The notes beneath the pieces are model-generated. The model saw nothing but the letters and a program-made list of their open reading frames with translations. It was not told where the DNA came from and did not search any database. A DNA stretch of 64,000 bases. It comes from Octopus sinensis (Eukaryota). The position numbers and the translations under genes are program-made. Location of the stretch: contig NC_043022.1 in the NCBI RefSeq assembly GCF_006345805.1, positions 18,724,001 to 18,788,000 on the forward strand, read 5' to 3'. This document shows, one piece after another, positions 4,666 to 63,553 of this stretch. The stretch's first letter is position 1. The number at the start of each line of letters is the position of its first letter.

Positions 4666-4750
4666 ATCATTACACCAGCATCCAGTTGTCCTCGCGGTCA
4701 GTTGAAGCGTGGTGACAAATGCTGTAGACCAGTTTTGCATTGTCCAGCAG
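4666..4750 (+). CDS. Gene A exon E2 (CRD1 start): [28 protein letters not shown](G), phase 0-1
   Basis: ctctttcaattcAG|atc ... gcag|GTaat; 85 nt; same length and Cys pattern as 56431-56515. Confidence 0.88.
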
Positions 4751-60600: not shown

Positions 60601-63553
60601 CTCTTCGCCCTATGAGATGACATCTGGTGTACTACAGGGATCTGTTCTTGGCCCCCTTTTATTTGTTGCATATGTTAATGACATAGATGCCAACTTAAAG
60701 AATGCCACAGTGCTGAAATATGCAGATGACATCAAGCTGTATCTCGAAATAAAGAGGTCAAATCCTGTACACTATAGATCTCTATTGCAAGCAGACCTGG
60801 ACACAATGCAGCAGTGGATCATGGACTGGCAACTCAAGCTGGCTGTGGACAAATGTACCACCATGCATTTTGGGAGGAGAAACCCAGCGTCCACCTACTC
60901 CCTCCACAACACTAGTCTCAAAAAGTCTTCATGTGAACGTGACCTGGGTGTTATTGTCAACAGTGATTTGCGTTGGACAAAACACATCACTAAAATTGTC
61001 AAGAAGGCTGAGGGTGTCTTGGCATCACTCACCAAATCCTTTGTGAGCCGCTCTCCGGCTATCTCTCTGCGGCTTTATCTAGCTATGGTAAGACCTCACC
61101 TGGAATTTGCATCACCGGTCTGGAACCCCTATCTTGCCCAGGATATCAATTGTCTGGAAGCTGTTCAGCGACGTGCAACCAAAAGAATACCCTCCATCAG
61201 GCATTTGCCATATCCTGAACGCCTTACTTCCCTGGGCATGGACACATTGAAACTCCGACGTCTGGCAGCTGACTTGGCAGACACCCATAAAATTATCAAC
61301 CATCGTACAAACAATAACTCTGAGCACCTTTTCAAACTCCACCCATCTAACACCCGTGGACATGTTTACAAAGTCAGAAAACAGCACAGCTCCCATGACT
61401 TCAGGAAACATTTTTTCACGCTGAGAGTTGCTGAAGCATGGAACAAACTGCTGGCATCAGTTGTTAGTTGTCGGAGCACTGCATCCTTTAAAACTTCCAT
61501 GCTTTCTGAGATTCGCCAACACTACACCTGATTTTCTCTTCCCCTCCATACACACGCAAGCATGTATCTGACTCATACATTGTTCGCTTTCCAGACATTT
61601 TTACATTACTGCATGTACTTTATATGCACTTTCTGACAAGTTGTGGTGCACCTGAGCACTGTATACAATAATTTCATTATATTATTATATATAAAGTTTA
61701 TGCTGCATTAGAATACACAAATTCTGCAATATTTACCAAAGAGAAAACTGTCATAAGGTTATAATGTTGCATAAAAGCACATCATCATTGCTGTCACCAG
61801 CGGTAGACAATCACTGGCCTTTTGCGACCTCAGCACTTGTTTCGGCTCTATATTTCCATGTATATCGCTAGCGCAGCAGTTACTGCTATTTCTGCTTGGT
61901 GTCTATCATTGAAAAGGCCAAATTAGGCTGAAATTATCTAATCTAGTAGTCCGAGCAGTGGAACCAATAGTGATTGTCTGCCACTGGCAATAGCTGTGGT
62001 ATACGTTTACGCATGGCTTCACCACGTTAGAGTTTTATCTCTTGGTAAATATTGCAGTATTTCTTTGTTCTCATGCAACATCCACTTTTAAGTGGTGAAT
62101 ATTTTACCTTTGCATGTGTCATAAATTTTGACAAATTAAACGGAAACACGACCAAGGAACAAGCAGAAAATTCACTCACAAGACACAGATGTGCTAATTC
62201 CTCGTCAGTTATCGCTTCCCCAAAAAATCCTTGCAATGTCCCATCTATAATGATAATATTGTTCATATTTTGGTGGTGTCGACGGGGAAAGGCTGCTGGA
62301 AATATTGGGCAAACGATGGTGACATTGATGAAAATAAACACAACACGTAAATGTGAAAATACAAAGTAAACAATAAGCGTACTAAATATATATTTTGTAA
62401 ACAAAGGAAGGCTCTAAATGGAGAGAAATGTATGGGTAACACAAAGGAAAATGTCCAGTAGGTCTGGAAACAGAAAGGGGACAGGTGGAAAGACTGAACA
62501 AAAGGTGTAAAAAAGATAAATTGTGTTGAAAGTAGAGAAAGAAGTAAGAGAAACCCACCAAGGTACGCTCAACTATCTACACTCGACAAGTCCACACTTG
62601 ATAGGCTACGCTCAACAAGTCCACACTTGACAAGCTACACTCGACAAGCCCACACTTGACAGGCTACACTCGACAAGCCCACACTTGACAAGCTACACTC
62701 ACCATTCTCCTTATCTCTCTCATTCACCCTTTTTCTTTCTCTCACTCTTAAGGTTCCTTTCGAACCTCTGAAGACAAGTGTGAGTGTGCCTTTCATGATG
62801 GTTACATAGAAACCGAAGACAAAATGTTCTGTCAAAAAATTGATCGCGTATGTCAGCCAGGACTGGAATTAAACTTTCGAGGTAGGTCACATGATTCCTT
62901 AATTTCCTTATTTAATTATTCTTTCACAGATTAATAACTGCTTCTCTTCTTCTCATATGCCACCAGTGAGGTATGGAAATAACGGCAGCTGAATTTCCTT
63001 GAAAGTTGATCTCATAACCATTGTCATCATCAGCACCAGTTTCACTGCCGTCATCATCACCACCACTGTCATCATCCTCATCACTACTATCACCACCACT
63101 ACCACCATCATCATCACTCACACCAGTACTATCGTCACCACCACCACCACCATCTTGACACCAAGCAATAGTTGTAAATGAGTGCCACTGTCATACAAGC
63201 AGGGTCGTTTCATTTCCAATCTTCCATGGAAGCATGTCTAGCCATGGAGGAAATAAAAGTTGACCTCGACCGGAAGAAGACAGGGTGTTTGGCAACACTG
63301 AGGACGAGGACAACAGCAGCAGCAGCAACAAGGGTCATGATGACAATGGCAACGATAACGATGATGGTGGTGGTGGTGGTGGTGGTAATGATAATAACAA
63401 CGATGATGATGATGATGATGATATATAAATATGTAATTCATTTTCTTTTCCCATCCTCCCATTTTTGTTTTTTCTTACAGGTAGATGCGAGACTTGTGCA
63501 GACGACCATTACAAATACTGGAATGGACATGGTTATTGCGTTAAACAAATGGA
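54555..63553 (+). CDS. Gene B: second TNFR-like paralog, 3'-incomplete (signal exon + 4 Cys-rich exons)
   Basis: Five AG/GT-bounded exons; the four Cys-rich ones match gene A exons in phase and (near-)length and conserve all Cys; spliced N-terminus MKAPASIVFIVYLFYQVSRVSGVCPEGQLEHGDKCC... Confidence 0.85.
54620..55540 (+). mobile_element. Highly degenerate CR1-like LINE RT fragment just after the gene B signal exon
   Basis: LGIVGKLGEWLHDFLKDRS...SGVPPRTVLRPLLL (decayed SGVPQGSVLGPLLF). Confidence 0.7.
56431..56515 (+). CDS. Gene B exon E2: VSRVSGVCPEGQLEHGDKCCKPVTHCPS(G)
   Basis: tttctctttcaatttAG| ... tcag|GTaat; 85 nt; 15/28 aa identical to gene A E2. Confidence 0.88.
57476..58226 (+). mobile_element. 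Helitron-like element of the same family with a different internal segment
   Basis: 5' TC after (TA)n; 3' hairpin cccgagcaaagccggg (58199-58214) + CTAG|T. Confidence 0.7.
58760..59120 (-). mobile_element. Penelope-like fragment (C-terminal GIY-YIG region)
   Basis: RRILEKCKAYFSSSKKCRLCLAEK resembles the conserved W.I......Y......C.LCL.EK end of Penelope-like ORFs. Confidence 0.6.
59538..59669 (+). CDS. Gene B exon E3: [44 protein letters not shown]
   Basis: 132 nt, AG/GT; 36/44 aa identical to gene A E3. Confidence 0.92.
59723..59930 (+). mobile_element. tRNA-derived SINE with a Nin/Deu-like core; minus copies at ~27470-27675 and three in 40960-41690
   Basis: ggcggtgagctggcagaatcgttagc head; core aaattccgccgaggtcgactttgcctttcatcc; absent at the matching gene A position. 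Confidence 0.75.
60218..61690 (+). mobile_element. 5'-truncated CR1/L2-like LINE with an uninterrupted RT ORF (~440 aa) in gene B intron E3-E4
   Basis: NYRPVSLTS, YLDFSKAFNSVPH, SGVLQGSVLGPLLF, YADDIKL; absent from the matching gene A intron. Confidence 0.9.
62753..62881 (+). CDS. Gene B exon E4: GSFRTSEDKCECAFHDGYIETEDKMFCQKIDRVCQPGLELNFR
   Basis: ctcactcttaAG|gt ... cgag|GTaggt; 129 nt; ~22/43 aa identical to gene A E4. Confidence 0.88.
63481..63553 (+). CDS. Gene B exon E5: GRCETCADDHYKYWNGHGYCVKQM
   Basis: ttttgtttttcttacAG|gt ... atgga|GTaagcc; 73 nt; 13/24 aa identical to gene A E5. Confidence 0.88.

What the first reader, a model, noticed from the sequence alone, without database searches (positions are those of the whole stretch)
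4666..63553. Tandem cluster of unannotated TNFR-like receptors hidden as micro-exons in repeat-rich DNA
Seen: two same-strand paralogs with matching exon phases, invisible to the ORF track; gene A splices into a complete 504-aa receptor. Established: TNFR-family ectodomains are Cys-rich repeats followed by a stalk and TM, and molluscs are known to expand TNF/TNFR families. Inference: this is a lineage-specific, diversifying immune or recognition receptor array that probably continues beyond both window edges.
Basis: partly seen in the sequence, partly recalled or inferred. Interest (0 to 1): 0.8.

Follow-up and report, generated by a model that had tools for sequence, protein, structure and literature searches.

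The report
Octopus TNF-receptor-like gene pair
The window holds two neighbouring octopus genes, split into many tiny exons among repeats, that encode divergent cell-surface receptors of the TNF-receptor type; public annotation already has them as 'uncharacterized proteins', so this is a well-read but fairly ordinary gene family.

Summary
On the + strand lie two paralogous genes of Octopus sinensis (contig C26, 18.72-18.79 Mb). All their exons have canonical AG/GT borders, and exon sizes and phases match between the two.

- **Gene A:** It is not complete: a 23-aa signal-peptide exon lies 3.5 kb upstream of the window, so the full protein is 527 aa.
- **Gene B:** it starts at 54555 and runs past the window end. 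The product is 330-332 aa with a short tail.
- **Third copy:** gene C lies inverted about 91 kb downstream. No other copy was found in the 2.7-Gb genome.
- **Annotation:** the genes are not unannotated. RefSeq has LOC115224693 plus LOC115224825 (gene A, split in two), LOC115224785 (B) and LOC115224755 (C), all 'uncharacterized'.
- **TNFR-like reading holds:** a family profile hits OPG, DcR3, 4-1BB and DR6 (E down to 4e-12). An AlphaFold model (pLDDT 94) matches only TNFR ectodomains. hhalign to a canonical octopus TNFR gives 94% probability.
- **Family range:** it is mollusc-wide and triplicated in octopods.
- **Signalling:** there is no death domain. The tail carries conserved RPLPxxP and YxxM/YxxI motifs.
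- **Untested:** immune function and diversifying selection remain unproven.

The parts
4666..4750 (+). Gene A exon 2 (85 nt): first half of CRD1 ([13 protein letters not shown]...HCPAG)
   Evidence: AG/GT borders, phase 0 in and 1 out. Identical to RefSeq P0001.
5273..5404 (+). Gene A exon 3 (132 nt): end of CRD1 and start of CRD2
   Evidence: Best-conserved exon across the three loci.
7624..7749 (+). Gene A exon 4 (126 nt): CRD2/CRD3. This is the most divergent ectodomain exon between A and C.
12076..12148 (+). Gene A exon 5 (73 nt): first part of CRD4 ([15 protein letters not shown])
13501..13583 (+). Gene A exon 6 (83 nt): end of CRD4 plus an extra Cys
   Evidence: Three-way alignment of A, B and C with conserved AG/GT.
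14045..14285 (+). Gene A exon 7 (241 nt): Pro/Thr/Ser-rich stalk
   Evidence: Length varies between paralogs: 241, 211 and 286 nt.
22992..23056 (+). Gene A exon 8 (65 nt): transmembrane helix
   Evidence: Hydropathy 2.66 over [19 protein letters not shown].
23591..23608 (+). Gene A exon 9, an 18-nt micro-exon (YIVRIK stop-transfer)
   Evidence: Identical in A, B and C.
29250..29267 (+). Gene A exon 10, an 18-nt micro-exon (QPCCNE; HQSRKK in C, LQSRKK in B)
   Evidence: Its five whole codons (PCCNE) are present in RefSeq P0005.
30539..30571 (+). Gene A exon 11 (33 nt): [10 protein letters not shown]
32541..32675 (+). Gene A exon 12 (135 nt): tail with RPLPKKP and YMEMG motifs
33272..33403 (+). 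Gene A exon 13 (132 nt): tail. Skipped in RefSeq isoform P0007.
35991..36305 (+). Gene A exon 14 (315 nt): tail (SETALKV ... VEP)
37958..38016 (+). Gene A last coding exon (59 nt), with TAA stop at 38014-38016
54555..54602 (+). Gene B exon 1: ATG and 16-aa signal peptide
   Evidence: Alignment with the first exons of A and C. Identical to RefSeq XP_036369689.
56431..56515 (+). Gene B exon 2 (85 nt)
59538..59669 (+). Gene B exon 3 (132 nt)
62753..62881 (+). Gene B exon 4 (129 nt)
63481..63553 (+). Gene B exon 5 (73 nt). The gene continues beyond the window to +80070.

Best explanation
**What it is (shown).** These are two tandem paralogous genes of Octopus sinensis for type I membrane receptors of the TNF-receptor superfamily. 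Each protein has a signal peptide and four TNFR-type cysteine-rich domains with 6+4+4+4 conserved cysteines. A Pro/Thr-rich stalk, one transmembrane helix and a cytoplasmic tail without a death domain follow. The genes belong to a mollusc-wide family that Pfam does not recognise. In octopods this family was triplicated into A and B in tandem and C inverted, spanning 183 kb. The coding sequence is cut into 12-15 small exons, down to 18 nt. These lie scattered in introns full of satellites and retroelement fragments.

**How it probably works (inferred).**
- The CRD rod binds a trimeric TNF-family ligand along CRD2-CRD3. That is where A and C differ most.
- The long tails of A and C recruit SH3/SH2 adaptors through the conserved class-I SH3 site RPLPxxP and the tyrosine motifs YQxI and Y[MV]EM. 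Death-domain adaptors are not expected to be involved.
- B lacks this tail and would act as a decoy or modulator.
For: - **Gene structure.** Canonical splice sites and matching phases hold in A, B and C. The models are identical to RefSeq proteins.
- **TNFR fold, sequence level.** A profile of 19 family ectodomains against PDB gives OPG 3.7e-12, DcR3 5.5e-10, 4-1BB 2.4e-9, DR6 2e-6 and HVEM 5e-3, over nearly the whole ectodomain.
- **TNFR fold, structure level.** AF2 pLDDT is 93.8 and pTM 0.82. The top 50 Foldseek PDB hits are all TNFRSF, probability at least 0.98 (1.00 for most).
- **Same-genome comparison.** hhalign to a canonical TNFR_c6-bearing ORF of this genome gives 94.2% probability and E 1e-7.
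- **Outside naming.** UniProt names the O. vulgaris relatives 'TNFR-Cys domain-containing protein'.
- **Topology.** Hydrophobic N-terminus and a single TM peak.
- **Copy number.** Only three loci were found in the genome.
- **Phylogeny.** Octopus copies are monophyletic at 98/99 support.
- **Tail motifs.** They are conserved in a presumably cephalopod homologue (species not identified) at 39% identity.
- **Expression of a relative.** Homologue mRNAs appear as uninterrupted ORFs in three sequencing runs.
Against: - Pfam TNFR_c6 does not hit A, B or C. Only 3 of 23 family members reach E<1.
- A single sequence, or the six octopus sequences alone, find no TNFR in PDB.
- Foldseek TM-scores are low (about 0.3) with large rmsd. 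This is expected for hinged rods, but it means the global shape is not shown to match.
- No death domain was found and no TRAF motif is conserved between paralogs.
- RefSeq splits gene A after the 18-nt exon, so a tail-less A transcript may be the main product.
Confidence: 0.85

Rival explanations
1. The ectodomain belongs to another cysteine-rich fold (Ephrin-receptor-like/GCC2_GCC3, furin-like or EGF-like), and the TNFR resemblance comes from cysteine composition.
For: The only Pfam hits on A and B are weak ones: TNFR_ELAPOR1_6th (E 0.012-0.06) and Ephrin_rec_like (E 0.07-1.3). HMMER reports a high bias term for the PDB hits.
Against: With the family profile, Eph receptors score E 0.21 and 3.9, against 4e-12 for OPG. 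No EGF, laminin or furin-like chain appears at all. Foldseek lists only TNFRSF in its top 50. hhalign aligns all four CRDs in register with a canonical octopus TNFR.
Confidence: 0.04
2. One or both window genes are decaying duplicates on the way to pseudogenes, and only copy C is the working receptor.
For: - The A-C ectodomain dN/dS is about 1.3 and the TM/juxtamembrane value is 2.8.
- A's TM helix carries Asn and Gln.
- B has lost about 200 aa of tail through an early stop in exon 12.
- RefSeq could not join A into one model.
Against: - All reading frames are open and all splice sites canonical in A and B.
- All 20 ectodomain cysteines are invariant among the octopus copies.
- B-type copies with the same short tail exist in O. 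vulgaris, and a partial B-type copy in O. bimaculoides lacks the tail region in the model, so the B form is old and kept.
- A-B and B-C ectodomain dN/dS is 0.5-0.6.
Confidence: 0.1
3. The receptors act in neural development or cell recognition, like p75NTR or TROY, rather than in immunity.
For: An unidentified TNFR-domain gene marks a class of immature neurons in the O. bimaculoides optic lobe (PMC9815951). The tail has SH3/SH2-type motifs and no death domain.
Against: That gene could not be linked to this family, because no sequence or accession was available. No expression data were found for LOC115224693, LOC115224785 or LOC115224755. This rival concerns biological role, not molecular identity, and is compatible with the best explanation.
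Confidence: 0.3

Closest known systems
Osteoprotegerin (TNFRSF11B) and decoy receptor 3 (TNFRSF6B) ectodomains
   Same: Best sequence-profile matches, E 3.7e-12 and 5.5e-10. They align across four CRDs with cysteines in register, including the 4-Cys CRD3/CRD4 pattern. DcR3 is the top Foldseek hit.
   Different: OPG and DcR3 are secreted decoys. OPG also has death-domain-like regions. The octopus proteins are membrane-anchored with a mucin-like stalk. Identity is only about 18-20% and no orthology is shown.
4-1BB (TNFRSF9), CD40, RANK, OX40: death-domain-less TNFRs that signal through TRAFs
   Same: Type I topology, a 3-4 CRD rod and no death domain. All are significant in the profile and fold searches.
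   Different: Those receptors signal through TRAF-binding motifs. No such motif is conserved between the octopus paralogs. Instead RPLPxxP and YxxM/YxxI motifs are conserved.
Canonical TNFR_c6 gene of the same genome (C3:102.05 Mb, four CRDs in one exon)
   Same: hhalign gives 94% probability and 28% identity over 151 columns.
   Different: That gene passes Pfam's TNFR_c6 threshold four times and is encoded in a single exon. The window genes pass none, and their CRDs are cut by introns.
Octopus vulgaris CAI9741114-16 and CAI-type fused model (P0003); O. bimaculoides LOC106875873
   Same: Orthologues or co-orthologues of A and B at 54-67% identity or more. UniProt labels two of them 'TNFR-Cys domain-containing protein'.
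   Different: These are gene-model artefacts. P0003 fuses two neighbouring genes, and the O. bimaculoides model is partial.
Drosophila Wengen/Grindelwald
   Same: Invertebrate TNFRs without a death domain (own knowledge; context in bioRxiv 10.1101/2024.07.27.603686).
   Different: They have a single CRD. The octopus proteins have four. Not compared here.

Membership tests
TNF receptor superfamily (TNFRSF) | Extracellular array of about 40-aa cysteine-rich domains detectable by sequence profile | tested here: met
   The family profile hits 22 TNFRSF entries in PDB, best E 3.7e-12, covering profile positions 24-168 of 170. hhalign to a canonical octopus TNFR gives 94.2% probability.
TNF receptor superfamily (TNFRSF) | Match to the curated Pfam model TNFR_c6 (PF00020) above its threshold | tested here: not met
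   No hit for A, B or C even at E<=10. 3 of 23 family members reach E<1, best 2.4e-4. The genome scan with PF00020 does not light up this locus.
TNF receptor superfamily (TNFRSF) | Elongated ladder-of-disulfides fold of TNFR CRDs | tested here: met
   AF2 model pLDDT 93.8. Foldseek PDB top 50 are all TNFRSF ectodomains, E 4e-5 to 1e-3, probability 0.98-1.00. Global TM is only about 0.3.
TNF receptor superfamily (TNFRSF) | Type I membrane topology (signal peptide, single TM) | tested here: met
   Hydrophobic N-terminal exon followed by one strong hydropathy peak. No dedicated signal-peptide or TM predictor was available.
TNF receptor superfamily (TNFRSF) | Binds a trimeric TNF-homology-domain ligand | not testable with these tools
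   No binding data. O. vulgaris is reported to have six lineage-specific TNFSF paralogues (bioRxiv 10.1101/2024.07.27.603686).
TNF receptor superfamily (TNFRSF) | Cytoplasmic death domain or TRAF-interacting motif | tested here: inconclusive
   No Death domain in Pfam at E<=10. (S/P)x(Q/E)E-like strings (SYQE, SGEE) occur in A but are not conserved in B or C.
Ephrin_rec_like / GCC2_GCC3 cysteine-rich repeats | Significant profile match to PF07699 or to Eph receptor structures | tested here: not met
   Pfam E 0.07-1.3, below threshold. PDB Eph receptors score E 0.21 and 3.9.

The most novel reading that the evidence does not exclude
A, B and C represent an undescribed, mollusc-wide branch of the TNFR superfamily. 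It would signal not through death domains or TRAFs but through a conserved Src-type SH3 site (RPLPxxP) and YxxM/YxxI phosphotyrosine motifs. In octopods it would have split into signalling (A, C) and tail-less decoy (B) forms, with the ligand-binding CRD3 evolving fast, perhaps alongside the octopus-specific expansion of TNF ligands.
Probability: 0.25. Interest if true: 0.6.

Novelty: new member of a known kind. Interest (0 to 1): 0.35.

Why it matters
It shows that standard domain models miss a whole molluscan branch of TNF receptors. TNFR counts in molluscs and cephalopods are therefore underestimates, and RefSeq leaves these genes 'uncharacterized', with gene A split into two models. A corrected 527-aa model for gene A, a three-gene octopod cluster, and conserved tail motifs of a non-TRAF, non-death-domain kind give concrete targets for work on cephalopod immunity or neural development. 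It is not a new kind of system.

Tried and rejected
- **Single-sequence and close-homologue searches led nowhere.** Pfam on A and B gave only sub-threshold hits. phmmer of A against PDB gave nothing. A profile of six octopus sequences against PDB gave only a spurious VapC hit. The TNFR signal appeared only after adding distant molluscan homologues.
- **Wrong first-pass splice borders.** I misplaced several donors by one base (exons 6, 9 and the 18-nt exon), which produced in-frame stops. Three-way alignment of A, B and C fixed the phases.
- **Missed exons.** My first model joined exon 11 directly to exon 14 and missed exons 10, 12, 13 and 15. RefSeq P0005 and gene C revealed them.
- **ORF at 8080-8280.** This conserved ORF, and the acidic minus-strand ORF at 7792-8139, were considered as exons and rejected. 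They lie in the intron, lack usable splice sites and are absent from all protein models.
- **Link to a published gene failed.** Linking the family to the 'tnfr' marker of immature optic-lobe neurons in O. bimaculoides was not possible, as no sequence is held.
- **No literature.** No paper mentions any of the LOC identifiers.
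Full report
**Where the window is.** The window is G000:C26:18724001-18788000 of a 2.72-Gb, 13,516-contig genome. Protein matches at 100% identity name the organism as Octopus sinensis. The DNA is AT-rich and full of repeats. These include a 373-bp x5.5 array, a 14-bp x72 array, a 2.8-kb GAT-rich minisatellite and a 260-bp x7 array. Fragments of reverse-transcriptase genes are also present.

**Checking the observation.**
- The + strand carries two colinear regions, 4555-36019 and 56324 onward. They are 73-92% identical, non-coding parts included.
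- Within them, short open stretches with TNFR-like cysteine spacing are flanked by canonical AG and GT(A/G)AG signals.
- Exons 2-5 have sizes 85/132/126/73 nt in A and 85/132/129/73 nt in B. Entry phases are 0,1,1,1 in both, and the fourth exon leaves phase 2.

**Finding the remaining exons.** I compared A, the continuation of B beyond the window, and a third copy found by searching the whole genome. Three-way alignments fixed the later exons and their phases. The database proteins then showed the four I had missed.

**Gene A.**
- It has 15 coding exons of 69, 85, 132, 126, 73, 83, 241, 65, 18, 18, 33, 135, 132, 315 and 59 nt, encoding 527 aa.
- The first exon encodes the signal peptide MRATTSITNSNLILLLFCVLCLQ. 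It lies at window -3522..-3454, that is C26:18720478-18720546, outside the window.
- Coding sequence makes up 4.5% of the 33-kb span.

**Gene B.** It starts inside the window at 54555-54602 (MKAPASIVFIVYLFYQ). It has four more exons in the window and seven beyond it, ending at window +80070. The product is 330 aa in my model.

**Independent support and annotation status.**
- My gene A is identical over residues 1-297 to RefSeq LOC115224693 (P0001). That model then reads through the donor of the 18-nt exon into the intron.
- It is identical over its last 229 residues to LOC115224825 (P0005), a separate 'gene' that is really A's cytoplasmic tail.
- Gene B is LOC115224785 (XP_036369689/90, P0006). 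It is identical to my model except for two residues at one acceptor.
- The third copy is LOC115224755 (P0002, 543 aa). It is on the minus strand at C26:18879231-18903568, with the same 15-exon plan as A.
- All are named 'uncharacterized protein', so the genes are annotated but unnamed, and gene A is mis-split.
- No paper mentions these identifiers.

**What the protein is.**
- Single-sequence and close-family searches fail. Pfam gives only sub-threshold TNFR_ELAPOR1_6th and Ephrin_rec_like hits, and PDB gives nothing.
- An exhaustive HMMER search with gene C found 27 relatives.
  - Named ones come from Haliotis, Pomacea, Plakobranchus, Mytilus, Potamilus and the chiton Liolophura. Unnamed transcript contigs that group with the octopus copies are presumably from other cephalopods.
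  - All share the ectodomain. Most also have a Ser/Thr/Pro stalk, one TM helix and a long low-complexity tail.
- A profile of 19 of these ectodomains, with A and B among them, hits PDB TNFRSF ectodomains almost exclusively. The best are OPG 3.7e-12, DcR3 5.5e-10, 4-1BB 2.4e-9, DR6 2e-6 and HVEM 5e-3.
  - These alignments cover positions 24-168 of 170.
  - The only other hits are Eph receptors at E 0.21 and 3.9.
- The cysteine register against OPG gives four CRDs with 6+4+4+4 conserved cysteines.
- AlphaFold2 on A's ectodomain with this alignment gives pLDDT 93.8 and pTM 0.82. Foldseek against PDB returns only TNFRSF ectodomains in its top 50: DcR3, RANK, 4-1BB, DR6, OX40, CD40, OPG, p75NTR and TNFR2.
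  - E-values run from 4e-5 to 1e-3. Global TM-scores are low (about 0.3), as expected for hinged rods.
- hhalign against a canonical, Pfam-positive TNFR ORF of the same genome (C3:102.05 Mb) gives 94.2% probability over 151 columns.
- UniProt's automatic rules already call the O. vulgaris relatives 'TNFR-Cys domain-containing protein'.

That test is not met.

**Size and age of the cluster.**
- Searching the whole genome with A's ectodomain, and with two more distant homologues that group with the octopus clade, finds only the A, B and C loci.
- The cluster spans 183 kb. A and B are in tandem, with starts about 58 kb apart. C is convergent, and its 3' end lies about 91 kb past the window end.
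- Nothing was found upstream.
- In a maximum-likelihood tree the Octopus sequences form one clade (98/99), nested within sequences taken to be other cephalopods. They split into an A/C type and a B type. The B type includes the O. bimaculoides and O. vulgaris sequences.
- So the family is old and mollusc-wide, and the duplication is octopod-specific and modest.

**Selection.**

| Comparison | Region | dN | dS | dN/dS | Bootstrap 95% |
|---|---|---|---|---|---|
| A vs C | ectodomain | 0.154 | 0.122 | 1.27 | 0.76-2.57 |
| A vs B | ectodomain | 0.295 | 0.466 | 0.63 | 0.40-1.00 |
| B vs C | ectodomain | 0.285 | 0.536 | 0.53 | 0.34-0.85 |
| A vs C | tail | 0.135 | 0.197 | 0.68 | 0.42-1.16 |

(Nei-Gojobori estimates.)

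- A-C differences cluster in the exon for CRD2/CRD3 (7624-7749), while CRD1-2 are almost identical.
- All 20 ectodomain cysteines are invariant in the octopus copies.
- This fits relaxed or diversifying selection on the ligand-binding part. It is not significant, and it is confounded by likely gene conversion. A-C blocks reach 97.9% identity at 32909-33660 and 97.7% at 42708-43191.

**Mechanism.**
- Shown: the domain architecture and the fold class.
- Inferred from what is known of TNFRs: binding of a trimeric TNF-family ligand along CRD2-3.
- The tail has no death domain and no TRAF motif conserved between paralogs.
- Several tail motifs are conserved between A, C and a homologue at 39% identity (P0012, presumably from another cephalopod): NYQxI, QRPLPxKPS, Y[MV]EMG, PIYxQ, SETALKV and VRVEPF. 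RPLP also recurs in more distant members.
- RPLPxxP matches the class-I SH3 ligand consensus, and YxxM the p85 SH2 consensus (own knowledge). I therefore favour adaptor or kinase docking over death-domain signalling. This is inference only.
- B ends 26 aa into the exon that in A and C carries the long tail. It lacks all these motifs, so a decoy or modulator role is plausible. Again this is inference.
- An immune role is untested.
  - Octopus TNF ligands are reported to be a lineage-specific set of six (bioRxiv 10.1101/2024.07.27.603686).
  - An unidentified TNFR-domain gene marks immature optic-lobe neurons in O. bimaculoides (PMC9815951). I could not link it to this family.

**Verdict.** The TNFR-like call is right and now rests on three independent tests. 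The claims 'unannotated', 'complete', 'lineage-specific' and 'array continuing beyond both edges' are wrong or overstated. This is a new, divergent member group of a known superfamily, of moderate interest mainly for annotation and for cephalopod immunology or neurobiology.

Noticed in passing
window 23609-29249 and RefSeq models P0001/P0005: RefSeq splits gene A into two 'genes'. LOC115224693 ends by reading through the donor at 23608 into the intron. LOC115224825 starts from an ATG at 29204, inside the polypyrimidine tract before the 18-nt exon. The 5.6-kb intron between them holds a 260-bp x7 tandem array.
   Followed up: partly
window +66950..+67010 (beyond the window, gene B exon 7 acceptor): RefSeq protein P0006 reads SLKAEERF where the canonical AG acceptor gives SPEERF. 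The two extra residues would need a non-AG acceptor (…TTAAT|TG). Unexplained.
   Followed up: partly
window 9222-11980: A 2.8-kb GAT/GAT-rich minisatellite (42-nt higher-order unit) fills most of A's intron 4. It creates very long spurious ORFs (up to 582 aa) on both strands.
   Followed up: no
window 6587-7585: A 14-bp unit repeated about 72 times (ACTCACCAAGCTAC) lies in A's intron 3. A shorter copy of the array sits at the same place in B (62553-62705).
   Followed up: no
window 15489-17767 (-), 21620-22543 (-), 60146-61531 (+): These are reverse-transcriptase ORFs of retroelements inside introns of A and B (RVT_1 E 9e-8, 5e-6, 1e-33). The one in gene B's intron has an intact 461-aa frame.
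   Followed up: partly
window 32909-33660, 37883-39114, 42708-43191 versus gene C locus: Blocks of 95-98% identity between A and the inverted copy C extend past A's stop codon. They are far more alike than the coding ectodomain (75% aa), which suggests recent gene conversion or a more recent duplication of the 3' half.
   Followed up: no
gene A residues C64 and C188 (window about 5300 and about 13575): Two cysteines are invariant in octopus copies but absent from the other family members. They lie outside the 18-Cys TNFR pattern, and their pairing is unknown (intermolecular?).
   Followed up: no
window 22992-23056: Gene A's transmembrane segment contains Asn and Gln ([19 protein letters not shown]). 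It has the lowest hydropathy of the three paralogues, and TM/juxtamembrane dN/dS between A and C is about 2.8.
   Followed up: partly
window 7792-8139 (-) and 62924-63190 (-): A conserved acidic, Gly/Asp/Ser-rich minus-strand ORF lies in the intron after exon 4 of both A and B, at 80-88% DNA identity. No protein model uses it, so it is probably a shared repeat.
   Followed up: no
protein P0014 (EukProt, 'Ancora sagittata'): A family member is attributed to a gregarine parasite of a polychaete. It is more likely host (animal) contamination of that transcriptome.
   Followed up: no
protein P0003 (Octopus vulgaris): The O. vulgaris 'hypothetical protein' of 528 aa is a fusion of two neighbouring paralogues. 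Two signal peptides and two ectodomains sit in one model.
   Followed up: partly
window 39536-39850 (-): This is an open 104-aa minus-strand frame rich in Ser/Glu, downstream of gene A's stop. It has no Pfam match, and whether it is coding is unknown.
   Followed up: partly
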